This document shows, piece after piece, positions 17,001-63,981 of a stretch of 64,000 nt of DNA (position 1 is its first letter; every line of letters begins with the position of its first letter). The notes under the pieces are model-generated. The model was not told the DNA's origin and did no database searches. It was given only the letters and a program-made list of their open reading frames with translations. The stretch comes from Podarcis bocagei (Eukaryota), in assembly GCA_964188305.1 (NCBI GenBank), contig OZ076890.1; one strand, written 5' to 3'. A program made the translations under genes and the position numbers.

Positions 17001-20000
17001 GAGAAATAACACTGTGTATAATGTTGCTTTTACAGCTGTGTACTGTGTAGGAGAGATTTCAGCCAGTTTTCTAGAGCTGTTTGATATTATTTACCAAGGT
17101 TGTAAGAGCCAAGATGGTTCAATAAATTGTAGTTATCTTCTGGTGGCCATGATGGAAGATTGGCATTATGTCAATTTAACTGCCTTTTAGGTTGCATCCA
17201 CATGATTATGATTGCTGCTAGGAAAGCTTGGGGCTGTATTCAACTAAATCATTGCACTAGCAATGCTTCTAGCATAACCAGAAACCCCCTCCTCCACCTG
17301 CCCCTTCCCCAGATCTTCTCTGAAGAGTCAGGAGAACTCCCAAAATGGGGTGTGTGGGAGGAAATGGTAGTTAATTCTGTCAGGTAAGCAGCAATGTCCT
17401 AATTTAAATACAACCCCAAGTAGGTTATTCTTTTTATCTCCTAAAAGCAGCAGTCATCAATGGAGCAGGAACCCCCACATCATTGGACAACCACCACACA
17501 CAGCTTTCTAACTAGTAGTCTCAGAGCCTGTGGGATTCCAGAGGGGAAGACACTTTTTAGAATGTTGTGCAACACAAGGTTAGGTGAAAAGCTGTGGCTT
17601 AATACTTATTACTGGTCCTCCAGCTAGATCCAGTTCCCTTCCTCTTCTTTAGTAGGTCAAATGATAGAATTATAATTCTATACCAGTGACTGATACATTA
17701 AACTTCTAGGGTGATACCCTTAGCCCATTGTTTTCATAAGTTTACTCTGTGTATGACTTGGTTGGCTATTACCCCAGTCTTTGTTTCCATAGAATAATTC
17801 CACAGAGTTGTACTTTCTAAATCAGTGTAATTTAAAAACTGATTATTTAGCACATTAATACCAAGCATCACTAGTATGTCCTAATTCTTGAAATCATTGC
17901 AGTTTTTTATAGGCTCTGGCCAAATGTTCCTAAGGGAAATTCCCTGCTCGTTGCTCCGATATATTGCCATATATTTGGAAGGAGGAAGTGGACCTGCAAC
18001 AAAAATTGTTTCATTGCTGTCTGCAGCTATTCAGCATTCCAGTTATGCCTCTTTCCAGGATACTCTTTTGCATCCCACCAACCACCCAATTTTCTGTTCT
18101 CCCAACATTCAGCCAGTATCCTCTGCAGTATCCTGAGCATTTTCAGAACTCATTACACTGTCTTAGGGGGCAGGGGAATTTGAGTTCTCCCAAGTCTGTA
18201 AGTCGTCCTATGCATAGATGCATGAGGTCCAACACTCCGACAATTGAGATCACTATTATAATACATTATTACAATCAGATTTTTAATTTTTAAAAATGTT
18301 ATTAGTATCCTGGGTTTAAGGCATAGCAACTTACATAATATTGACTCTTCCTTTATCAAAACAAGCACAGTATGAAGCCAAATAATACAGTGAACAGGGT
18401 TTTTTAAAATAAACATACCTGGATGTGGACAAAGTGCATGGATTGGTCAGCATGACTGCTTGCACTCTGGACCTTTGCCCCTCTTGGCTGATAAAAACTA
18501 GCAGGGAGGGGACAGGGAGGTGATTCTTGCCTCCCTTTGAGAGGGTGTGGTCCCTGTCGACTTGAGGGAGACAGTGGTAAAACCACTTCTCCAGAAACCC
18601 TTCCTGGATTCAGAAATTACTGGTAGTTACTGGTCAGTTGCCACTACCCCTTCTTGGGCAAGGTTCTTGATCAGGTAGTCATAGATCAGGTCCAGGCACT
18701 CTTGGAGGAAACTGATTTTCTAGCTCCATTTCAATTGGGGTTTCTGCCCAGTTTCAACACAGAAACAGCTTTGGTTGCCCTGTATAATGACCTATGTCAG
18801 GAGAGAGACAGTGAATATGTTAATTCTTCTGAACCTCTCAGTGGCTTTAATAACATCGACCACGGTATCCTTCTGGAGCAGCTCTCTGAGTTTGGGGTGG
18901 ATGGCACCACCACTTTGTGGTGGTTTGGGTCCTACTAGAATAGTGTTTCCAGAAGGTAGTCCTTGGGGAGTGCTCTTTGGCCCTGTAGAGCCTTCAGTGC
19001 AGGATTCTCCAGGTTTTGATTTTATTCCATATGCTGTTTAACATCTACACAAGTGGGGTCATCAGAGTTTTGGAGTTCATTGTCAGCAATATGCTGATGA
19101 CACACAGCTGTACTTCTTTACAGGTGTAGCAGTGGATGTGCTGGACCATTGTATTGCCTCAATAATAGAGTGGATGAGAGCCAATAAACTGAAACTCTAT
19201 CTGGATTAGACTAAGGCACTGTTAGTGGGCAGTTCCATAGACTTGAGGGTGGGAGGTGACCTGCTCTTGTGTACATCTGGATCCATTGTGTCACTTGAGG
19301 CTCAGGTGACCTTGGTGGCGCAGAGTGCCTTCTATCCACTTTGGCTAGTGGCTCAGCTGTGCCCCTTTCTGGACAGGGATAGCCTGACTTCTGTCTCTGG
19401 TAACCTCTAGAATTGGAATAACAGTATTGGAACAAAACCCACCCTCCTCTTCCTTCTGAAGGCATGAGGTCGGATTACACCAGAGCTTACATATTGTCAT
19501 AGTCTATATCATTTATGTAGTGACAACATTCAATACTATTTTTGCTTCCATGCTGTCTCCGTCTTACATTGTTAGACATAAGCCAACCTTTTAGCTTTTC
19601 CCTGTCACATTTTGGATGATCCAGCATCATATTGAACTTAAGCTCAGCAATGCTAAATTCTTAATCTCTTTCCATTCCTCTTATCCTTTTCTCCCTTAAC
19701 CCCAGTGGTATTCTTTATTCATGTTCTTTTCAAGCCCGTAATTTGGGTGCCCATGTTAGATTTTGTTTTATCCTTTTCTTCCAGTATTTACTCTCATGCT
19801 AAACTTGTCATTTTCATCTTTATAACATTTCTAAATCTTTCTAATAGAGCCTTAGCCCCTTTTCTCTCCCCCCCCACACCATAACACGTGTCTTGATTCT
19901 ACTTGATTCTACATGTCTTGAAGGTACTGCCAGTTGATTGTTGAGCCCAGGGGGGCGATAAGGTGAAAAGGTGGTGACTTAGGTTTATTGGCCCTGAATT

Positions 20001-22767: not shown

Positions 22768-22815
<48 letters not shown>

Positions 22816-25520: not shown

Positions 25521-28500
25521 TAATAAATTTATACCCTGTCAATCTAGCTGGGTTTCCCCAGCCACTCTGGGCTGCTTCCAACAAAATATTAAAATACAGT
25601 AATCCATCAAACAGTAAAAGCTTCCCTAAACAGGGCTGCCTTTAGATGTCTTTTAAAAGTCTGGTCGTTCTTGTTCTCTTTGACATCTGGTGGGAGGGCA
25701 TTCCACAGGGCGGGTGCCACTACCGAGAAAGCCCTCTGCCTGCTTCCCTGTAACTTGGCTTCTCGCAGTGTGGGAACTGTCAGAAACATACTGGGAGCCA
25801 TTGTAGGTCTTTCAAGACCGGTGTTATGTGGTCTCGGTGGCCTCTCCCAGTCACCAGTCTAGCTGCCGCATTCTGGATTAGTTGTAGTTTTCAGGTTACC
25901 TTCAAAGGTAGCCCCACATAGAGCGCATTGCAGTAGTCCAAGTGGGAGATAACCAGAGCATGCACCACTCTGGTGAGCAGTCCGTAGGCAGGTAGGATCT
26001 CAGCCTGTGTACAAGATGGAGCTGGTAAACAGCTGCCCTGGGCACAGAATTAACCTGTGCCTCCATGGACAGCTGCAAGTCCAAAATGACTCCCAGGCTG
26101 CGCACCTGGTCCTTCAGGGGCACAGTTACCCCATTCAGGACCAGGGAGTCCTCCACACCCGCCCGCCTCCTGTCCCCCCAAAACAGTACTTCTGTCTTGG
26201 CAGGATTCAAGCTCAATCTGTTAGCCACCATCCATCCTCCAACCGCCTCCAGACACTCACACAGGACCTTCACTGCCTTCACTGGTTCCGATTTGAATGA
26301 GAGGTAGAACTGGGTATCATCCGCATATTGATGAACACCCAGTCCAAACCCCCTGATGATCTCTCCCAGCAGCTGCATGGAGATGTTGAAAAGCATGGGG
26401 GAGAGGACAGACCCCTGAGGCACCCCACAAGTGAGAGCCCATGGATCTGAACTCTCATCCCCCACCACCACTTTTTGAACATGGTCCAAGAGGAAGGAGC
26501 GGAACCACTGTATAACAGTGCTTCCAGCTCCCAGCCCCTCTAGACAGTCCAGAAGGATGTTATGGTCAATGGTATCAAAAGCTGCTGAGAGATCCAGCAA
26601 AAGTAGGGAACAGCTCTCACCTTTTCCCTAGCTTGCCGGAGATCATCGCTCAGTGCGACCAAGGCAGTTTCAGTCCTATGATGAGGCCTGAGTCCCGACT
26701 GGAAGGTGTAGGATGCCTTAAAGCGTTATAATCTACTGCTTGCTGCCTTTCATTAAAATATTCAGGCAATGCATCAAAGGGGAAGGAAAATAGTATTATT
26801 GTGAAGTGGTGTCATTCTCTATGAGTGCTAAGGAACTAGGGTAGAGCATTCTTGAAACCCCCTAGAACATGCACCTAGTTACATATGATAATTTTGAAAG
26901 GAGGCGAGATAGTGACCTTCCTCTCTAAAAGAGAGAGGCTGAAAATTGCCTTGGTTGCCATGGCAAACTTTGAGTCCCTGAGAGAGATGTTGGCAAACAG
27001 GCTATATCTCCAGTGCAGAATGTTTACAGTCCTGTGCTGTAATTATCTCTCAATGACTGGCAGAATTAATCAGAGCCTCTATGTTAATTAGCCTGCTCTG
27101 CAGTCCCCAAAACAGGTGGTGGAAAATATGCAAATCTATGCAGAATTTTAATGTTCTGCATAAGCAGTTTTAATTACCATAAACCCCCTCTCCTTGTTTT
27201 TCCTTTTCATGTGCTTTCTCACTTGCATTTTTCCCTCATGGCTACAGTAATTTCATCTTTCATAAGATGGTTTTAAATAAATGAACTGTGTTTGCCTATA
27301 TAAATACCAAATTCTGTTTCTTGGAGACAAGATGTGTGGCGACTGTTTGTTTTTGTTCCTGGATGCAATTCAGCATCTAAGGTTTTTCAAGCTAGTACCT
27401 TGTTTAGTTTGAAATACTATGTTTATGAATTATTATAAAATGTATAAAAGAAAAATCTGCTGCACTAATCCAAAACTTGCATGCTGCTGATTACTGAGTT
27501 TCACATTGACTAGGAAAGGGGCAGTTTGGTACAGGTGTGTGCAGATCTGTCTGTAGTATGGCAATGACTGGGACAGCTTAGAAACTTTAAAGGCCGTGAC
27601 TTCAAATCAAGCACTAAATAGGAAATTTTCTTGAGCATATGTATATGTGTTTTGAGGGGGCAGAACTGGAGGTCCTCTGTCTCTCTCCAACTACAATCAA
27701 GCCCCTGTTTTTGTTAATGATTTGAAGTAACAGCAGCGTTTTTTTCTTCCATTCTGATACGTGGAAATATTGGCTTAGGGCTACAATACCAAATTAGCAT
27801 TTCTTCCTCCCACCTGTTATCTACAGTTACCTATGAAAACAAGTTGTTGAAATAAGCAGCTTTTTATCTTATGGATAACCAAAAATCTTGTTAATATCAT
27901 CCCTCCTCATATTACAATAAACTATGATAATGGCTGTGAGAGCCAGTGTGGTGTAGTGGTTAAGAGCAGTAGTCTCGTAATCTGGGGAACCGGGTTCGCG
28001 TCTCTGCTCCTCCACATGCAGCTGCTGGGTGACCTTGGGCCAGTCACACTTCTTTGAAGTCTCTCAGCCCCACTCACCTCACAGAGTGTTTGTTGTGGGG
28101 GAGGAAGGGAAAGGAGAATGTTAGCCGCTTTGAGACTCCTGAAGGGGAGTGAAAGGCGGGATATCAAATCCAAACTCTTCTTCTTCTTCTTTACATTGAT
28201 ACCCATTCTGTTCTACAAAAGCTTGTATATTTTCTTTCCTAGTCTAAACCTAATGAAGAATCTGGGGACAGTCAGCAGCCAAGCCAGCCTTCCCAGCAGC
28301 CTTCAGTACAGGCGGCCATACCCCAGACCCAGCTCATGCTGGCCGGAGGACAGATCACTGGGGTAAGATGAGTCCAAGTGAATTGTAATGAGCCACCAAC
28401 TCATGTTGTTGTATTAGACAGTGTAGATTGTTGCTTTATCATTCCAGGTGAATGTGGCCGGAGAAAATCTCCCTATTGGTTTGATGGGTCTCTCAGTGGC

Positions 28501-48165: not shown

Positions 48166-48562
48166 GCATCCGTTGGTAGTCAGAAGAAAAACTTCAGTGC
48201 TGCTGATGTGTGGGGCTGCGAATGCTGACATTTTCTTCTGCCCCTCTCTAGCTCTTGCATCTGGTGGCTCTCTTCCAATAACATCACTGGATGCAACTGG
48301 GAACTTGGTATTTGCCAATGCTGGAGGTACGCCGAACATCGTCACTGCCCCTCTGTTCCTGAACCCTCAGAACCTTTCACTGCTCACCAGCAACCCAGTT
48401 AGCTTGGTCTCTGCAGCTGCAGCCTCCGCAGGGGCCTCTGGACCAGTTGCCAGCCTTCATGCCACCTCCACCTCAGCAGAGTCTATCCAGAACTCTCTCT
48501 TCACCGTGGCCTCGGCCAGCGGGGCTGCCTCCACCACTACTACTGCCTCCAAGGCGCAGTGA
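7994..48562 (+). CDS. POU2F1: POU2F1 / Oct-1, spliced CDS of the 'L' isoform: join(7994..8021,12695..12763,20119..20213,24959..25012,28243..28362,30763..30942,34843..34969,38662..38756,39536..39709,42683..42824,44070..44215,44560..44739,45186..45291,45642..45984,46419..46507,48252..48562), 752 aa
   Basis: 16 exons, all GT-AG, phases join to 2259 nt with no internal stop. Contains POU-specific domain ([75 protein letters not shown]), POU homeodomain ([61 protein letters not shown]) and Oct-1 C-terminus ...TTTTASKAQ*. Confidence 0.97.
9747..9885 (+). mobile_element. Degenerate tRNA-derived SINE with CR1-type tail
   Basis: gatagctca...gttcgagtcccac head, then ttggactagatgaccctcatggtcccttccagctctacaattctatga. 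Confidence 0.7.
12695..12763 (+). CDS. POU2F1: POU2F1 exon 2 ([24 protein letters not shown])
   Basis: tgcag|ACTCAAGAATG...GACACAG|gtaag. Confidence 0.95.
14546..15010. mobile_element. Tc1/mariner MITE with internal tandem hairpin units
   Basis: TA|CAGTGGTGCC...GGCACCACTG|TA; a homologous inverted copy lies at 33127..33457. Confidence 0.9.
15752..16114. mobile_element. Degenerate hAT-like MITE
   Basis: CAGGG...CCCTG ends; internal similarity to 47575..47967 and ~20735..21050. Confidence 0.55.
16883..17015. mobile_element. Short non-autonomous DNA transposon remnant
   Basis: cagggcttttttt...gaaataacactg imperfect terminal inverted repeats. Confidence 0.5.
18610..19420 (+). mobile_element. 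Degenerate L2 LINE reverse transcriptase fragment
   Basis: [29 protein letters not shown] motifs with frameshifts. Confidence 0.85.
20119..20213 (+). CDS. POU2F1: POU2F1 exon 3 ([31 protein letters not shown])
   Basis: ccccag|GCACACAG...CATCAG|gtaaat. Confidence 0.95.
21076..21308. mobile_element. Tc1/mariner (Tigger-like) MITE, same family as 5225..5465, opposite orientation
   Basis: TA|CAGTGGTACCTC...GAGGTACTACTG|TA. Confidence 0.85.
22771..22812. repeat. (GT)21 microsatellite
   Basis: Direct reading. Confidence 0.95.
22875..23278 (+). mobile_element. CR1 LINE 3' fragment
   Basis: End of ORF2 (tatgaggaac..ttgagggagttgggtatgtttagcctgg..aagaggagactgag) and gattctat tail. Confidence 0.85.
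24959..25012 (+). CDS. POU2F1: POU2F1 exon 4 ([18 protein letters not shown])
   Basis: tttatag|GTTCAG...GTACAG|gtaagt. Confidence 0.95.
25180..25337 (+). mobile_element. CR1 LINE 3' end
   Basis: ggagtctccttctttggaggtctttaagcagaggcttgac...ccaactctatgattctatgattcta. Confidence 0.9.
25463..26706 (-). mobile_element. L2 LINE, 5'-truncated, with RT fragment (ORF 25902..26600) and (TTA)n tail
   Basis: [27 protein letters not shown] and QYADDTQ RT motifs; (TAA)n at 25463..25515; internal deletion near 25780. Confidence 0.93.
27938..28192 (+). mobile_element. Squam3-type tRNA SINE with (CTT)n tail
   Basis: GAGAGCCAGTGTGGTGTAGTGGTTAAGAGC head, gggttcg B box, CORE-like gggtgaccttgggccagtcac, ctcttcttcttctt tail. 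Confidence 0.85.
28243..28362 (+). CDS. POU2F1: POU2F1 exon 5 ([15 protein letters not shown]...GGQITG)
   Basis: ttcctag|TCTAAA...ACTGGG|gtaaga. Confidence 0.95.
29038..29315. mobile_element. hAT MITE
   Basis: CAGGGGT...ACCCCTG TIRs; perfect 8-bp TSD TCTTGCTC (29030..29037 / 29316..29323). Confidence 0.92.
30763..30942 (+). CDS. POU2F1: POU2F1 exon 6 ([18 protein letters not shown]...PIQIAQ)
   Basis: ttcctag|CTCACG...GCACAG|gtgagc; overlaps ORF 30793..30987. Confidence 0.95.
31480..32640 (+). mobile_element. Heavily deleted L2 LINE (endonuclease region through to 3' end)
   Basis: [18 protein letters not shown] and LHWLP motifs; 3' aaacaattgaagacattcttgtttcaacaagctttt. Confidence 0.75.
32661..32722 (+). 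mobile_element. 5'-truncated Sauria SINE tail inserted in the L2 3' region
   Basis: Matches 2122..2190; 13-bp TSD TATATTGTTTTTA (32646..32658 / 32723..32735). Confidence 0.85.
32962..33080 (+). mobile_element. Old MIR/CORE-like SINE remnant
   Basis: gagagccagtgtagt...ctgggagacctgagttcag...taatctaccttatagggttg. Confidence 0.55.
33127..33457. mobile_element. Tc1/mariner MITE (family of 14546..15010) flanked by (TA)n tracts
   Basis: TA|CAGTGGTGCC...GGCACCACTG|TA; (TA)n at ~33084..33102 and 33458..33504. Confidence 0.9.
34843..34969 (+). CDS. POU2F1: POU2F1 exon 7 ([43 protein letters not shown])
   Basis: ttcaag|GATTTG...CAGCAGG|gtgagc. Confidence 0.95.
35373..38170 (-). mobile_element. Degenerate CR1 LINE covering most of ORF2
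   Basis: 3' tail aacataagaa at left; ADD-type RT remnant (tcgtcagcaaa, ~36350); endonuclease start YLYDNARR...[18 protein letters not shown] at 37970..38164. Confidence 0.85.
38662..38756 (+). CDS. POU2F1: POU2F1 exon 8 ([31 protein letters not shown])
   Basis: tttcag|GTCTCCTG...TCTCAG|gtcagt. Confidence 0.95.
39536..39709 (+). CDS. POU2F1: POU2F1 exon 9 (PATPTR...start of POU-specific domain...LGFTQ); tandem acceptor allows a start at 39533
   Basis: ttag|cag|CCAGCA...ACTCAG|gtaaaa. Confidence 0.95.
40075..40330 (+). mobile_element. L2 reverse transcriptase remnant
   Basis: [21 protein letters not shown] motif. Confidence 0.6.
42052..42254. mobile_element. Tc1/mariner MITE (third family)
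   Basis: CAGTTAAACC...GGTTTGACTG|TA. Confidence 0.75.
42683..42824 (+). CDS. POU2F1: POU2F1 exon 10 (POU-specific domain GDVGLAMG...WLNDA)
   Basis: atgcag|GGTGAT...GATGCAG|gtgaga. Confidence 0.97.
44070..44215 (+). CDS. POU2F1: POU2F1 exon 11 (linker and homeodomain start, [34 protein letters not shown]...KSFLE)
   Basis: tttcag|AAAACC...CTGGAG|gttagt. Confidence 0.97.
44560..44739 (+). CDS. POU2F1: POU2F1 exon 12 (homeodomain, NQKPTSEE...[11 protein letters not shown]...PTSL)
   Basis: tttcag|AACCAA...TCATTG|gtaaga. Confidence 0.97.
45186..45291 (+). CDS. POU2F1: POU2F1 exon 13 ([36 protein letters not shown])
   Basis: ctctag|GTGGCA...GTCACAG|gtaaga. Confidence 0.95.
45642..45984 (+). CDS. 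POU2F1: POU2F1 exon 14 (Ser/Thr/Ala-rich, ...SQFAAG)
   Basis: tttcag|GCACCACAG...GCTGG|gtaggt; overlaps ORF 45677..45988. Confidence 0.93.
46419..46507 (+). CDS. POU2F1: POU2F1 exon 15 ([29 protein letters not shown])
   Basis: ttgcag|AGGTGCC...ATTCAAG|gtcagt. Confidence 0.95.
47575..47967. mobile_element. hAT MITE
   Basis: CAGGGG...TCCCTG; imperfect 8-bp TSD CTTTGATG / CCTTAATG. Confidence 0.75.
48126..48163. repeat. (GT)19 microsatellite in the last intron
   Basis: Direct reading. Confidence 0.95.
48252..48562 (+). CDS. POU2F1: POU2F1 last coding exon 16 ([17 protein letters not shown]...TTTTASKAQ*)
   Basis: ctctag|CTCTTGCA...CAGTGA; overlaps ORF 48173..48562. Confidence 0.96.
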
Positions 48563-48760
48563 GTTGGACTGAGCTGTGCTTACCCATAGCCTATTTTACT
48601 CTGCAGTGAGATGGGCTGCCAGCTGGGTTTACAAACTGCAAAATGTGATTGGTTTCCTCTCACCGTGTTGCTGGGGACAAGGGAGAGAAGGAAAAATACA
48701 AAAGGAAAAAAAACCAAGAAGAAGGATTTAAAACTGGGACAAACATTTGCCTAATTTTAT

Positions 48761-48993: not shown

Positions 48994-49130
48994 NNNNNNN
49001 NNNNNNNNNNNNNNNNNNNNNNNNNNNNNNNNNNNNNNNNNNNNNNNNNNNNNNNNNNNNNNNNNNNNNNNNNNNNNNNNNNNNNNNNNNNNNNNNNNNN
49101 NNNNNNNNNNNNNNNNNNNNNNNNNNNNNN
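48994..49130. other. Assembly gap (137 N)
   Basis: Run of n. Confidence 1.
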
Positions 49131-51837: not shown

Positions 51838-51879
<42 letters not shown>

Positions 51880-57600: not shown

Positions 57601-60019
57601 TACTGCTTAGTTTTTGGCAGCTCTGCTGTTTTCAGGATGTCTTCGGCAAAAGATTGTGTGGTCTTAGAGGTTTGATTTGATGACTCTTGACTTGGAGGAT
57701 CTCCTCATGTGTTGGTTTTCCTACCTTCTTAATGCACAGGGTTGGTTTGGATACTTTTTCTGAGGACATACTGGAGGCAAGTTCTATTCTGGAGGCAAGT
57801 TCAACACCCAAGATCACAAGCAACTGTTGGACGTAGGGAAAACTTGGTTTTATTCTTAAAATATCAAAACTGCATTGTCCTCCGTTTCACATCATTTCAG
57901 AAGTCCTGTGGGTTTTCATAGTGGAAAACCTTGGAGACGTCTTTCTTTCCTCCCCGGAATAGCTTTGGGCATTGTCACATTACATGCTGTTGGCTTGATG
58001 AATTGCATCAGTCAAGCCTGACGTGTTCATGTGTGAAGCAAGGGAGAAGGTAAATATATATTAGTTGTCCAGCTATTCTTCCTCTGGAAATCAGCTGGGT
58101 TGCAGAACTTCCCTGGAAAGCTTTACTAATAGACTTATTGTTCTGACATTATGTAAAGTGGTATTAATATTGTGTGACTTTTCTAAGAGCTAGGTAGATT
58201 TATAAGTAGGTAATAGGGAAATGGAAAATGACTTCTCAAAGATAAGAGCACTTGGAACAAAAGATGTGGAAAACAAGGTGTGCTTTAAAAGAAAACAAAT
58301 CTGAGGAAGGAAATGAAACAACCAGTTGGGAGATGGGATCATGAGAGGAAGATCCTTAGTACTATGAGGAAGGTTGGAATGTCTCCCCTCTTCTGCCTTA
58401 TTTCTCTTTACCTCACTCAGGCGAAAATATGGGTTTAATAGTTTGTTGACGGCTCTTTCCCCAAACATTTCTGAAACTCTGATCTTTGTTCTCACCAAAA
58501 ATTCTCTGTTTTTACAATGTAGAACCCATCAAAATAAAAGCCTTCCTGAAGTATTTCTAGCAGAAATGTCTTTAACCCACCAGGGGGCTATAAGTGTAAA
58601 TGGTGAATGTTTCTGGCAAGAGTACCACAGGAATAGTGGTAAATATTAAGGAGTACAGATCTGTGTCAAATTAATATCTGCACAATACAAGCCATCCACC
58701 CTGGCCAACAGCCTTGGAACAAACACCTTTTGTCAGGGCTGGGCGGAAACTGTCACTTGTCCCATCTAATCCATGTTAGCACATTGGCATTTTCGATCCA
58801 GTTTCTGTATTTGAATTTGAGGAAGAAGCCACAGCAGATACCCATATACTGATTGGTAAGTTACTTCCATTTATTTGAACCTCCCTGGAGGAAGATATAG
58901 GCTTTTCTCTAAAATCCAGGAGATAAGAGGTCAGGTGCAAGTGCATTTGAGAGCATCACGGGACTCCGGCTGTTTTGCTTGTGCTCCCCTGGTCCCACCG
59001 TGTCGCTGTTCCATTTCCTTCTTCTGTGGTAGTGTCTAAGGCTAGGTGTGAGTAAGTGTCGGGTGTTTATCCGCCACAGGTACGGGAGCTGTCGTATACC
59101 TCATTTCTAACTCATAACTGAGTAACTTGCTTTAACTTTCTCCAAACCCTACAGAGTTGCCAAGACTGCCCTCCCTCCCTTGATTAACGTGGAACTCTGG
59201 CTTATAGCATCCTGTGACCTGCAACCTGGGGGGCGACCCCTTAAAGCCTCTGAATGTCGCTGCTTAAAAGCTACTGCAAACTGAGGGCAAATTGCAATCT
59301 TCTATTTCTTTTGGTTACCAGGGGTCCTCTCGTAGTCTGTGAATATCCATCTCCACTCCCAATCCGTGCATGAAACCTCCATGCTGCCTTCTCCCTCCCC
59401 CCTGGTGAGATGTCAGGGCTATAATGTACTGCAGGGTCAAGGCAGGACCCTGACGGCTCCTCGCAGCCAAGTGCTGCATGCATATTGCTCGCTACTTTTT
59501 AATTTTGTTTCTCTCATGCTCCTCCCATATTTAATTTCCTTCGTTTATTATTTGACAATCTTGTTCCTCCCCGTCCCCGCCTCTAGGCTGACCACAAGCT
59601 GCATCCCTGTCCCTTCTGCCATTTTACTTTGAATGTAGTTTTCCCACCCTTTGGAAAGAGAGGCTTTTCCAGGTCACGGTGCACTGCTATATGCCGAGGG
59701 GGGCGGGTTCTTTGTTTTGTTTTGTTCTTTTAGAAATTTCCAGCCAAAACCAAAGATTTCCTAATGATTGTATAAACTCAAAACAGACAAACAAACAAAC
59801 CAAAGACAAAAGGGGCGTCTTCAGCACCAATCATATTAAGATGGCTCGGTCCCATCCTGTGCTAACTTGCTTGGGAGACCAAGTTCTGTTTGACCTCCAC
59901 AAATCCAAAGGCACACAGCCATTGGGAGGGAGAGTTCAGTGGGGGAAAGTGATGGACTCCACAGATTGGTTGTGAAGCTGAAGACATTGGTGCATGACTG
60001 GCGGCTCTGGTGGGTGCTT

Positions 60020-60121
60020 TTAACCCTTTGGGAGCTGGGTGATATTAATACACGCTGAGGTGCACTTCTGAGCTCTCTCTCTCTCCCCCCCCCCCCCCGC
60101 CACTGCTTGGAAGAGGCTGTC
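60020..60121 (-). other. CD247: Homologue of the CD3-eta alternative terminal exon of CD247, antisense within the POU2F1 3' UTR (DSLFQAVAGGGGERERAQKCTSACINITQLPKG*)
   Basis: Minus strand ttttgcacaacag|GACAGCCTCTTCCAAGCAGTG...CCAAAGGGTTAA. The adjacent frame continues KSTHQSRQSCTNVFSFTTNLWSP. Both segments resemble the mouse CD3-eta tail as recalled. Confidence 0.7.
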
Positions 60122-61525
60122 CTGTTGTGCAAAATCTCTGAAAAAAATATGTTTTGTTTTTCTTTCTCTCCCCCCCCCCACTTCTTTTTTGTTCTTTAAT
60201 TATTTTTGCAGCACCACTGTGCAACTATGCATTGTATTTCTCAACCTTTTGTGCTAGGTAGGTAGATGCCTATGACTTTTTAAACTTTGGGGGAGGGGGG
60301 TTGCCAATGAAGGAACTTTTTACATGGATCTTTTAAATCTCAGTTGATTAGGGGGTGTTTGGTTCTAGGGTCATACAAGCTCTATCCCAAAGCAAAATCC
60401 AAATGTTAATAATATTAGCCTGATGCAGATACCAAAGATAATTTCTTTCCTGCAGAACCTTAGACTTGTGTATTAAGTACAATTACCCAGCACTTGCATT
60501 AGTCTAACCTCAGTAATTCCAAAGCTTAGATGTATATTTTGGTATATTTCTGGGATATTAAAAATGTCGTTTAAATTCTTGTTTGTTTCAGTGTAATGCT
60601 CTTAAAGTCATAGCATGGAGATAACTGAATTGTCTTATTCTTAGTAGTTTGAAATAATAGTATTTTTGTATGTTTTGGGTGTGTCAATGTATGTATTAAC
60701 ACAACAGTTTTCACTGCCTAGGTGTTCATAATTGAGAAAAAGTGTACATAATCTGTGATTTCCACCAGATTGTCGATTTAGATTGCATTTTCTCTGATTG
60801 CCATTCCCAACAGGGGGATCTTTATTCCTTTTTTTTTTAAAGAGACAGCATGCTTATAACAGTGAGATTGTACTTTTGCCCTCCCATAAAGGTCCAGTTC
60901 CCTGAAAACATCGTCCTTTAATTTTGAAAGGTGAGGCAAGACTCAAAGTGTAGCAATTGAATAACTAAAAGCACGGATATTACTATGCTAGGTATTTATG
61001 CTTTTTGTTTTTATAGTGTGGGGGAGGCATCTTGCCAAGAAAGCTATGGTTTGTGGAAATTGATTTATAAAATCCTGAGCTCTTCCTATGGCAACAAAGA
61101 GATATTTGTGTTGATTACAGAGCTTCCCTGTCGTCAACCATCAAGTTGGCTTATATCTTCCTCAGGCCTGCTAATGTGGTCAATTGTACAGCTTAATTTA
61201 CATGAACACTTTGTATCTAACTGTGATAAATATATTAAGATACAATGCATTCTTGCCTAACTTTAATTTTGAGAACTGTAAGGCCCTAATTTGAAACTGT
61301 GTGTGTCTCCAAAATGGAGATGAAAGGATGCTGTCTCTTTAAATATACCTTCTATTTTTTCCCTAGTGGCTGCCTACAGGTGGCTGTGGGCATTGAGAGA
61401 GACTGTGTAGATTATAGTGAATCAGGATGAAAATGGTAGATTTTGTGTAGATGCATTTGTCTGCTGTAATTTTTATATATATAAAACTTACTGTAACTGT
61501 ACAGTTCATTTCTGTTGTAAACATC

Positions 61526-61531
61526 ATTAAA
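61526..61531 (+). terminator. POU2F1: Candidate distal poly(A) signal ATTAAA
   Basis: Preceded by several TGTA motifs and followed by gtgtttt...tggtttgtggttttt; transposon remnants resume ~0.8 kb downstream. Confidence 0.6.
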
Positions 61532-62199
61532 CCATTTTTCCAAGTGTTTTAACATGCATGCACTGGTTTGTGGTTTTTGAACAAGTGAAAGGAAATGGCT
61601 GAAAAGAAATGGCAGAACCTTGTATTTCTGTTGTTTTAAACCTGACAATCCGGAGCTGAAGGATGTTCCTCCTTATTTTCTCCCAACTACAAATTACAAG
61701 ACATCTCAGGTTAGAAGACTCACATAATTGGACAGCAGAAACAGGTAAGCCTCTCAGTTCTGTTATTCTGCAGAAAATAAATATGCCAGATTTATTTTAA
61801 AAGCTTACACTACTTATGGCTTCCATGTTGAACAGGATGTGTTAAATTCTTTCAGTTAAGTAACCACCATGTGCAGGTTGTCTAACTAGCTCAACATCGT
61901 AATGCACATTTATTTAGTATTCTCTGCATTTGTGTCCTTGACAAGATAATTTGTTTATTGCTACAGGTGCATGTGTCATGCATACTACTTGTTTGGTCCT
62001 ACAATAGATATTGCTGCCCTTCTAAACTGTCCTAAAAGTCAGTGATGTGAGATCTGTGCACCCTTGTTTAGCTTTAAATCTTAAGGTTTTGTAGGACTTA
62101 TTGCTCCTTTTCATTAAGCTCTTTTTCCCCTTTTACTTTCCACTGCAACATGGCGCTATGAAGTTCAAACGAATCCAGAATAAGACCAGAAGAGGGAAA

Positions 62200-63912
62200 A
62201 GCAGGTATATTTAAGAAGCTTTTATTTAAAAATACACAAAACACATGGTTTCAGTTCTTTAGATAGAAAAGCATTTTCTTTGTTCTTTTCAACTTAATTT
62301 ATAGATTTAAAGCTCCAGAAGTGTATTTTTGAAAGATCAGATTTAGGCTGTGCACACCCCATACATTTAACCACCTCTGCCCAGTGCCGGATTTACATAT
62401 AGCCTAAAAAGAGCTATATAGCTTGGGGCCCTACTCTCTTGGAGGCCTCCAAAAAATTTAAAGGAAAAAACGATGTATATTTCCAATATATAAGATGAAC
62501 TGAAATACAATTGAGAAGATGTTTAACAATTACTTTGATAAAATACATATTTTGTTATGTGCAAATGGCTTTAGATACCTATTAGGTCCATAAATTACCA
62601 TATAGCATATATCCAACACAAAAAAGAGCGACAATTTGTTGTTGACAAAGGACAGCTGGACATACAAAGGGCCTCATCAAACCTAAATCCAGCCCAAGAA
62701 TTCTAGGATCTGTAGTTTAAGGGTGCTGGGAATTGCTCTGTAAGGGATAAACTACAGCTCCTGAGTTTGGGAAGTGGGTGTATGCAGCCTTAGTCCAGTA
62801 TGAGTTCTGATAAGCAGACTCTCACTTCCATTTTGCCGATAGAGATGTATGTGAACCCTTTTTGGATCAACCAGTCTGATAAGATGGGCAGAAGGAATAA
62901 AAATCCTCTATGAAACTAGGTAAGGGAAATAGATTCAAGGTATAAAATTCTCACAATAGGCATTTGCCTGGGAAAAAAGCATAATAGGCAGCTGTGACTT
63001 CCCACGTCCTAAGGCTACAACTCTAAACACACTATGGAGTAAATCCACTGGCTATTCCTTTGTGTAAACATGCTCCCCAGCTAATTCCCCCCTTGCTCCA
63101 CTGGTATTAAGCTTACTTAACCAGGACAGCAGCACCTGACAAGTTTGATCAGGATTCTGTCTTAACAGGAATTTGAAGCATCTACATTTAAAACAGGAGG
63201 TAATGTATTACTCATTTCAACCAACCATATATCCTGTGGAAGAAGAACCTACTTCTATTCTCTTAACTATGGGAACATACTGTCTGTGCCTGCCCATACT
63301 TCTCATGCAGCAGAAGTCAATTTTCATATTAAATCCCTTTAGCAGTGCATGTTTACTCAAAAGAATGCCCTACTGCACTCAGTCCAAGGTCAGTGGTGGT
63401 GCATGTTTTTGTATCTTGGCAAAAGAGTGTTTAAAAAGGTCCTTCGGGGCAGTGGTGATACACTGTATATCTCCTCCCCCAAACCCCAATTGCTATTTAT
63501 AAATAAAAACCCAAACCTATAACAAGAGGGGGGGGCAGTTAACCTGTTGGTGCTCAGAATTATCTGATGTTTTGGAACGAAATCCTTCCACATGAGCAAC
63601 ATTTTTAATGCACATTTAGCTTCAAAAAAACATCTTTCTCCAGAAAAGAAAAGGACTTTGAAATAGCCATCGCAACAGCTGGTCTTAAATTTTAACTGAG
63701 CAACAACATGGTGCCCAAGCTCTATAGCTATGTACACTTTGAAAGCTACAACTTGAAATTAGTTTTAAAAAGGAGCTTTGGTTTTTATGCTCATGTAAAA
63801 GTGGCATTTGTTGTAGAAGGCAACAGATTTCTGAACAGATCATCTTGAGAATGGTAATCAAGATTCCCCCTCGCCATGGAAATAGTTCTCCTCTTGCTAG
63901 ACTCAACTGTAG
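62200..63912 (-). other. CD247: Probable CD247 3' UTR
   Basis: Follows the TAG stop. First minus-strand AATAAA I found is at 62226..62221, with a pyrimidine-rich downstream tract; an ATTAAA alternative is at 63609..63604. Confidence 0.55.
62344..62792. mobile_element. Nested MITEs: a CAGTGCCGGATTTA...TAAATCCAGCCC element (62382..~62695) inside a TAGGCTGTGCACAC...GTGTATGCAGCCT element
   Basis: Two pairs of imperfect terminal inverted repeats. Confidence 0.6.
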
Positions 63913-63981
63913 CTAGTAAGGAGGTGGTAGGGGCTGCATTTGAAGGACATCGTATGTATCCTTCGTTGCTTTGCTGAGACC
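63913..63981 (-). CDS. CD247: CD247 (CD3 zeta / TCR zeta chain) last coding exon, GLSKATKDTYDVLQMQPLPPPY*
   Basis: Reverse complement tctttctttatcag|GGTCTCAGCAAAGCAACGAAGGATACATACGATGTCCTTCAAATGCAGCCCCTACCACCTCCTTACTAG. Matches mammalian [21 protein letters not shown] (second half of ITAM3). CD247 is the convergent neighbour of POU2F1 in mammals. Confidence 0.93.
   Translation of the reverse strand, partial: GLSKATKDTYDVLQMQPLPPPY

What the first reader, a model, noticed from the sequence alone, without database searches (positions are those of the whole stretch)
59836..60140. CD3-eta-like alternative exon of CD247 preserved antisense inside the lizard Oct-1 3' UTR
Seen: on the minus strand, ...tttttttcagagattttgcacaacag|GAC AGC CTC TTC CAA GCA GTG begins at 60121 and reads DSLFQAVAGGGGERERAQKCTSACINITQLPKG* (stop 60022..60020). 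Read from its first base it is phase 0, like the zeta last exon at 63981, so it could replace that exon. One base out of frame the sequence continues KSTHQSRQSCTNVFSFTTNLWSP (ORF 59836..60132). A minus-strand AATAAA lies at 59549..59544. Known (recalled): mouse CD3-eta replaces zeta exon 8 with an exon reading DSHFQAV...ERE...PKGESTQQSSQSCASVFSIPTLWSP, which removes the last ITAM tyrosine. That exon is antisense to Oct-1 and is conserved among mammals in DNA more than in reading frame. Inference: the overlapping zeta/eta-Oct-1 sense-antisense unit and its acceptor predate the mammal-reptile split. Lizards may make a short eta-like chain, or the block may be conserved only as an Oct-1 UTR element. 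The 14-C run at 60085..60098 controls the frame: one base fewer would fuse DSLFQAV to the long C-terminal frame. I know of no description of this in reptiles, but cannot search.
Basis: partly seen in the sequence, partly recalled or inferred. Interest (0 to 1): 0.85.

Follow-up and report, generated by a model that had tools for sequence, protein, structure and literature searches.

The report
CD3-eta-like block antisense to Oct-1
Downstream of the lizard CD3-zeta gene, on the strand opposite the Oct-1 gene's tail, lies a stretch that looks like the mouse "CD3-eta" alternative exon. Its reading frame is broken, so it is more likely a conserved non-coding Oct-1 element than a working lizard eta exon.

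Summary
The G14 run, the minus-strand AATAAA, the phase-0 zeta last exon at 63981 and the Oct-1 C-terminal exon ending at 48562 are all present.

None of these features stands out from chance:
- The 60121 acceptor ranks at the 93rd percentile of AG sites (4.6 equal-or-better sites per kb per strand).
- A slightly better acceptor lies 16 nt upstream (exon start 60137) and opens a third frame.
- The 119-codon open frame is marginal (about 5-7%).

No tool could supply a mouse, bird or other reptile sequence. That peptide finds this block as the best hit in the whole window (E 3e-6). It aligns colinearly over all 63 residues (z about 16), but only with about four frame changes.

My reading: the block is homologous to the mouse eta exon region, its DNA is conserved and its frame is not. 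It most likely sits in a long Oct-1 3' UTR. Lizard eta-like splicing is possible but unsupported. The earlier scan note on this window concerns only the PPPY zeta terminus.

The parts
59836..60140 (-). Eta-like block.
60122..60123 (-). AG of the candidate acceptor in front of GAC AGC (exon start 60121). In phase 0 it gives the frame A tail DSLFQAV...LPKG* (33 aa).
   Evidence: PWM score 5.9 bits, 93rd percentile
60138..60139 (-). AG of tttttttcag, the first AG after the T-rich tract (exon start 60137). In phase 0 it gives the frame C tail RFCTTGQPLPSSGGGGGGERESSEVHLSVY* (30 aa).
   Evidence: PWM score 7.0 bits, 96th percentile
60136..60137 (-). Second AG of cagag (exon start 60135). In phase 0 it opens frame B directly, giving a 100-aa tail that contains KSTHQSRQSCTNVFSFTTNLWSP.
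   Evidence: PWM score 4.3 bits, 87th percentile
60073..60098 (-). G14 homopolymer (60085-60098) followed by (AG)6 (60073-60084). This is a length-unstable tract that sets the frame relation between DSLFQAV and what follows.
60020..60022 (-). TAA stop that ends frame A after LPKG.
59839..60195 (-). Frame B, open for 119 codons from stop to stop. The listed ORF is 59836..60132.
59544..59549 (-). Minus-strand AATAAA downstream of the block. The sequence after it is A/G-rich, so the downstream element is poor.
63913..63981 (-). CD247 zeta-specific last coding exon, in phase 0: GLSKATKDTYDVLQMQPLPPPY*.
   Evidence: E 3e-5 to residues 144-163 of PDB CD3 zeta chains
62221..62226 (-). Best-looking poly(A) signal for the zeta mRNA: AATAAA with a U-rich downstream element.
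   Evidence: inference
48252..48562 (+). POU2F1 (Oct-1) last coding exon, ending ...TTTTASKAQ*. The 3' UTR starts at 48563.
60557..60562 (+). Candidate Oct-1 poly(A) signal (ATTAAA with a U/GU-rich downstream element), located 3' of the block.
   Evidence: inference
61526..61531 (+). Candidate distal Oct-1 poly(A) signal: ATTAAA with an upstream TGTA and a GU-rich downstream element.
   Evidence: inference

Best explanation
The block at about 59940-60140 is the lizard counterpart of the DNA that mice use as the CD3-eta-specific terminal exon (exon 9) of Cd247. It has kept its position, between the zeta last exon and the Oct-1 coding end and antisense to Oct-1. It has also kept much of its sequence, but not a continuous eta reading frame. 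Similarity that survives an ancient split without a preserved frame means the constraint is non-coding. The most likely source is the long 3' UTR of POU2F1/Oct-1 transcribed from the + strand, where the block would act as an mRNA regulatory segment. The mouse eta exon would then be an exonised antisense copy of a conserved Oct-1 UTR block. In the lizard the acceptor-like AGs and short ORFs are by-products, at most giving rare truncated zeta variants. What is shown: the sequence, the layout and the ordinary strength of the signals. What is inferred: homology (from a recalled mouse peptide), the extent of the UTR and the source of the constraint.
For: The layout is established. Oct-1 POU exons lie on the + strand and the Oct-1 C-terminus ends at 48562. 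The CD3 zeta last exon starts at 63981 on the - strand. A recalled mouse eta tail finds this block as the best hit in the whole 64 kb in six frames (60093..59953, E 3.4e-6), and the DSLFQAV part scores third. A frameshift-tolerant alignment scores 110 against 30.8 +/- 5.1 for shuffled peptides. It is colinear from the acceptor to the last residues, with frame changes near 60083, 60061, 60021 and 59948. Nothing points to coding use. The 60121 acceptor is at the 93rd percentile and is preceded by a slightly better AG at exon start 60137. The open frame is marginal at 4.8-6.7%. No Pfam family matched, and no protein with this tail was found in 5.8 billion clusters or 1.84 billion representatives. 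On the + strand, poly(A) hexamers between the stop and the block have poor downstream elements, whereas 60557 and 61526, beyond the block, have U/GU-rich ones. No interspersed repeats occur from 52 to 64 kb, unlike in the introns. Reference lists confirm that the mouse eta locus overlaps Oct-1 on the opposite strand (title of Ohno et al. 1994).
Against: No mouse, human, bird or other reptile sequence could be obtained from any tool. The extent of the Oct-1 3' UTR is inferred from hexamer context only, and a + strand AATAAA at 58533 could end the mRNA before the block. Two of the four frame changes sit next to length-unstable tracts (the G14/(AG)6 tract and a C5 run) and could be assembly errors. 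Frame B stays open for 119 codons and can be entered in phase 0 from the AG at 60137-60136. The protein searches were blind to long isoforms because of length limits and 50% clustering.
Confidence: 0.6

Rival explanations
1. The block is a working alternative terminal exon of lizard CD247. Read-through past the zeta poly(A) site, followed by splicing of exon 7 to one of the three clustered AGs, would give an eta-like chain that lacks the last ITAM tyrosine. The tail would be 30, 33 or 100 residues long depending on the AG used. Under this reading zeta/eta splicing predates the mammal-reptile split.
For: All three acceptors are compatible with phase 0, and each replaces the exon that carries DTYDVL. 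Frame B is open for 119 codons and carries the best-matching part of the recalled eta tail. The exact DSxFQAV match begins right after an AG. The mouse eta isoform is itself a minor product (from memory), so a weak acceptor is not disqualifying. A length error in the G14 run could hide a longer frame.
Against: The acceptors are ordinary for this window, at the 87th to 96th percentile. The AG that gives DSLFQAV is the third AG after the T-rich tract. At least the frame changes at 60021 and 60061 are not at homopolymers. The nearest minus-strand AATAAA has a poor downstream element. No protein with such a tail was found. No transcript data were available.
Confidence: 0.2
2. The block is a conserved non-coding DNA element, such as an enhancer or insulator for CD247 or POU2F1, or part of another non-coding transcript. 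It lies outside the Oct-1 mRNA, and its resemblance to the eta exon is again a by-product.
For: The block sits in a 1.5-kb island richer in G+C, 0.47-0.52 against 0.34-0.40 in the flanks. A + strand AATAAA at 58533 could end Oct-1 before the block. Neither strand folds better than shuffles, with z +2.1 and 0.0.
Against: The 58533 site has a weak downstream element, while good sites lie beyond the block. [quoted passage not shown]
Confidence: 0.13
3. The resemblance is due to chance. The block is unconstrained intergenic DNA, and the similarity to the eta tail is an artefact of recall biased by the lizard sequence.
For: No tool-derived mouse sequence was available. Every single signal (AG, ORF, AATAAA) is at chance level.
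Against: The recalled peptide has the right length for the published sizes.
Confidence: 0.07

Closest known systems
Mouse CD3-eta exon (exon 9 of Cd247), alternative to zeta exon 8 (Jin et al. 1990; Clayton et al. 1991; citations seen; papers not held)
   Same: It lies downstream of the zeta-specific exon on the same strand. The phase-0 junction is followed by DSxFQAV. It shares the motifs ERE, PKG, STxQSxQSCxxVFS and LWSP in the same order. It would remove the distal tyrosine of the third ITAM.
   Different: In the assembly the motifs lie in three different frames. Frame A stops after 33 codons. Two other AGs lie closer to the T-rich tract. No transcript or protein evidence exists. The mouse comparison is from memory.
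Cd247/Oct-1 convergent sense-antisense overlap in mouse (Ohno et al. 1994 EMBO J; Koyasu et al. 1994 EMBO J; titles seen; Lerner et al. 1993 from memory)
   Same: The two genes are arranged tail to tail, with the eta-like block between the Oct-1 stop codon and the zeta last exon, antisense to Oct-1.
   Different: In the lizard, overlap of the actual transcripts is not shown. The best-looking poly(A) sites suggest that zeta mRNA (about 62200) and Oct-1 mRNA (about 61550) end without overlapping. Only an eta-type read-through transcript would overlap.
Human eta-like sequence without an eta protein (from memory: exon 9 DNA conserved, frame not)
   Same: DNA similarity persists without a continuous eta reading frame.
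   Different: This was not tested here. Human sequence was not used.

Membership tests
CD3-eta-type alternative terminal exon of CD247 | Lies 3' of the zeta-specific exon on the CD247 strand | tested here: met
   The zeta last exon is at 63981-63913 (-) and the block at 60140-59836 (-), 3.8 kb downstream.
CD3-eta-type alternative terminal exon of CD247 | 3' splice site compatible with the phase-0 end of exon 7 and stronger than background | tested here: inconclusive
   Phase 0 is compatible. The PWM score is 5.9 bits (93rd percentile, 4.6 such sites per kb per strand). A 7.0-bit AG lies 16 nt upstream. The true zeta acceptor scores 10.8. The PWM was recalled and is approximate.
CD3-eta-type alternative terminal exon of CD247 | Sequence homology to mouse Cd247 exon 9 | tested here: inconclusive
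No database mouse sequence could be reached.
CD3-eta-type alternative terminal exon of CD247 | One continuous reading frame encoding the eta tail (about 63 residues) | tested here: not met
   Frame A stops after 33 codons. The motifs are spread over frames A, C, A, B and C. Caveat: two of the shifts adjoin length-unstable tracts (the G14/(AG)6 tract and a C5 run).
CD3-eta-type alternative terminal exon of CD247 | Spliced exon 7-to-exon 9 transcripts or protein | not testable with these tools
   No lizard RNA data were available. The protein searches found no such tail, but they are blind to it in part.
Conserved element of the POU2F1/Oct-1 3' UTR | Lies between the Oct-1 stop codon and the used poly(A) site on the + strand | tested here: inconclusive
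   The stop is at 48562. Hexamers upstream of the block have poor downstream elements, and those at 60557 and 61526 have good ones. No 3'-end data were available.
Conserved element of the POU2F1/Oct-1 3' UTR | Sequence conserved across amniotes beyond the limits of the eta coding part | not testable with these tools
   No vertebrate DNA could be reached. Scans of metagenome, genome and viral contigs gave only chance hits.

The most novel reading that the evidence does not exclude
Lizards really splice CD247 exon 7 to this block. One route is the AG at 60137-60136 into the 119-codon open frame. Another is the AG at 60123-60122, if the G-run is one base shorter than assembled. Either would make an eta-like CD3 zeta variant lacking the last ITAM tyrosine. 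Zeta/eta alternative splicing and its antisense coupling to Oct-1 would then be an ancestral amniote feature rather than a rodent peculiarity.
Probability: 0.15. Interest if true: 0.55.

Novelty: new member of a known kind. Interest (0 to 1): 0.3.

Why it matters
If confirmed with real cross-species alignments, the block would show that the sequence used as the mouse CD3-eta exon is older than mammals. It would also show that the sequence is held in place by something other than eta coding. That supports the older view that eta is an exonised antisense piece of a conserved Oct-1 3' UTR. It also dates the tail-to-tail CD247/POU2F1 arrangement to before the mammal-reptile split. The result is a modest extension of a story known since the 1990s. 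It is probably already visible in whole-genome alignments, and it does not open a new question.

Tried and rejected
- **Protein databases.** A search with the frame-B ORF found no candidates. The representative search gave only three tandem-repeat artefacts whose weak repeated hits add up; I rejected them as unrelated.
- **Cross-species DNA.** I looked for host contamination in public collections. The search for related loci on genome and viral contigs found nothing. Degenerate DNA patterns for QSC..VFS....LWSP with 12-nt and 9-nt spacing gave 0 and 10 metagenome hits and 2 bacterial hits. All are chance matches with no flanking similarity.
- **Literature.** Full-text search for eta peptide strings found nothing. 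The key papers (PMC51840, PMC53891, PMC394925, PMC394877) are not held. Searches for a reptile CD247/eta description or for a Cd247/Pou2f1 antisense pair gave nothing relevant.
- **RNA families and structure.** Rfam gave no match. Folding gave z +2.1 and 0.0, so a structured RNA element is rejected.
- **Pfam.** Only a sub-threshold LAX hit appeared (E 0.07); I treated it as chance.
- **Earlier scan notes.** By sequence they returned nothing.
- **Query padding.** I did not pad a query with X to get round the length rule of the protein search.
Full report
**Observation.** The minus strand reads ...aaaacatatttttttcagagattttgcacaacag|GACAGCCTCTTCCAAGCAGTG, with the G of GAC at 60121.
- From 60121 (frame A) it reads DSLFQAVAGGGGERERAQKCTSACINITQLPKG, followed by TAA at 60022-60020.
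- The ORF 59836..60132 (frame B) contains KSTHQSRQSCTNVFSFTTNLWSP.
- The G14 run lies at 60085-60098 and is followed by (AG)6. By coordinate arithmetic, one base fewer in that run would move DSLFQAV into frame B.
- The minus-strand AATAAA is at 59549-59544.

**Context.** The zeta-specific last exon follows tctttctttatcag at 63981 and reads GLSKATKDTYDVLQMQPLPPPY* in phase 0. It matches residues 144-163 of solved CD3 zeta chains at E 3e-5. The + strand carries POU-specific and POU-homeodomain exons at 39.6, 42.7, 44.1 and 44.6 kb. One of these exons matches Oct-1 structures at E 3e-27. The C-terminal ORF ends ...TTTTASKAQ* at 48562. The block therefore lies 11.3 kb 3' of the Oct-1 stop on the opposite strand, and 3.8 kb 3' of the zeta last exon on the same strand.

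**Are the signals more than chance?** I scored every AG in the window with an approximate vertebrate acceptor matrix that I recalled from memory.

| Site (first exon base) | Score (bits) | Percentile of all AG sites |
|---|---|---|
| 60121 (DSLFQAV) | 5.9 | 93rd |
| 60137 (tttttttcag) | 7.0 | 96th |
| 60135 (cagag) | 4.3 | 87th |
| 63981 (true zeta exon 8) | 10.8 | 99.7th |
| 48252 (Oct-1 last coding exon, + strand) | 8.45 | 98.2nd |

- Sites as good as 60121 occur 4.6 times per kb per strand.
- The AGs for 60137 and 60135 are the first two after the only T-rich tract, so they would normally be preferred over 60121.
- In phase 0 the three sites open three different frames:
  - 60137 gives RFCTTGQPLPSSGGGGGGERESSEVHLSVY* (frame C, 30 aa).
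  - 60135 gives a 100-residue frame-B tail.
  - 60121 gives the 33-residue frame-A tail.
- Frame B is open for 119 codons, 60195..59839.
- Only 4.8% of codon positions in the window lie in open stretches of at least 98 codons. Local dinucleotide shuffles reach 98 codons in a given frame 6.7% of the time. This is suggestive at best.
- A 33-codon opening is trivial, since 48% of positions lie in stretches that long.
- Poly(A) hexamers occur 1.7 times per kb per strand, and the one at 59549 has an A/G-rich, poor downstream region.

**Homology to the mouse eta exon.** I could not obtain a mouse, human, bird or other reptile sequence from any tool.
- The protein databases returned nothing related. 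The length rule and the 50% clustering make them partly blind to eta-type isoforms.
- Pattern scans of metagenome, bacterial-genome and viral collections, aimed at host contamination, gave only chance matches.
- The original papers are cited in held reference lists but are not themselves held.

Its length fits the published 122 + 63 = 185 residues, also from memory.
- tblastn against the whole window puts its best hit at 60093..59953 in frame B (E 3.4e-6, 49% identity over 47 residues). The DSxFQAV...PKG part in frame A ranks third.
- A frameshift-tolerant alignment scores 110, against 30.8 +/- 5.1 for 300 shuffled peptides (z 15.7).
- The alignment is colinear from the first residue after the AG almost to the last residue.
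- It follows the path A (DSLFQAVAGGGGE), C (ERESSEV), A (TSACINITQLPKG), B (KSTHQSRQSCTNVFSFTTNLWSPS), C (FPPLNSPSQ), with shifts near 60083, 60061, 60021 and 59948.
- If the recalled peptide is right, homology is beyond doubt and the eta frame is not kept in the lizard.
- The shift near 60083 adjoins the G14/(AG)6 tract and the one near 59948 adjoins a C5 run, so these two could be assembly errors. The shifts at 60061 and 60021 are not at homopolymers.

**Interpretation.** Similarity that survives the mammal-reptile split without a preserved frame points to non-coding constraint. The obvious candidate is the long Oct-1 3' UTR on the + strand.
- The + strand hexamers between the stop and the block (48761, 49965, 51364, 54841, 56294, 58533) have weak downstream elements.
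- The ATTAAA at 60557 has a U/GU-rich downstream region. The ATTAAA at 61526 also has a TGTA just upstream.
- On the minus strand, the AATAAA at 62226 looks like the zeta mRNA end.
- The two mature mRNAs would then end about 650 nt apart without overlapping. Only an eta-type read-through transcript would overlap Oct-1.
- The 52-64 kb interval has no intra-window repeats, unlike the introns.
- The block sits in an island richer in G+C.
- Neither strand folds better than shuffles, and Rfam finds nothing. A structured RNA is therefore unlikely, and an accessible protein- or microRNA-binding segment is more plausible. That last point is inference.

**Comparison with what is known.** In mouse, eta arises by splicing exon 7 to exon 9 instead of exon 8, and the eta locus overlaps Oct-1 on the opposite strand. 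The titles of Ohno et al. 1994 and Koyasu et al. 1994 say so. From memory, the human counterpart is conserved as DNA but makes no eta protein, which Lerner et al. 1993 explained by the Oct-1 overlap. The lizard block matches that picture and extends it in time. It fails one defining feature of a working eta exon, the continuous frame, and its other features are inconclusive or untestable here. I found no description of it in reptiles in the searchable library. That library cannot be searched for the Greek letter eta and lacks the key journals.

**Verdict.**
- Best reading (0.6): a homologue of the eta-exon region kept as non-coding sequence, probably within the Oct-1 3' UTR.
- Real eta-like splicing: 0.2.
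- A conserved DNA element outside the UTR: 0.13.
- Chance resemblance: 0.07.

This is a new member of a known kind, of modest interest.

Noticed in passing
window 63913-63927 (-): The lizard CD3 zeta chain ends ...QPLPPPY*, which is a PPxY-type motif. Solved mammalian chains have ...ALPPR at this position (alignment). The scan had already noted this (s1-335582).
   Followed up: partly
window 48994-49130: There is a 137-base N run about 430 bases after the Oct-1 stop codon, inside the presumed 3' UTR.
   Followed up: no
window 25902-26600 (-) and 18654-18938 (+): ORFs that look like reverse transcriptase lie in Oct-1 introns; the longer one has a YADD motif. They are probably LINE fragments. 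Intra-window repeats are confined to 1-36 kb.
   Followed up: no
window 61526-61600 (+) and 62150-62226 (-): The best-looking poly(A) sites of Oct-1 (+) and CD3 zeta (-) face each other about 650 bases apart. On this prediction the main mRNAs of the two genes would not overlap.
   Followed up: partly
window 60127-60134 (-): TTTGCACA lies between the clustered AGs on the CD247 strand. From memory this is an 8-mer match to the miR-19 seed. A single 8-mer is within chance expectation.
   Followed up: no
window 51838-51878 and 22770-22812: Dinucleotide microsatellites are shared between the presumed 3' UTR and an intron.
   Followed up: no
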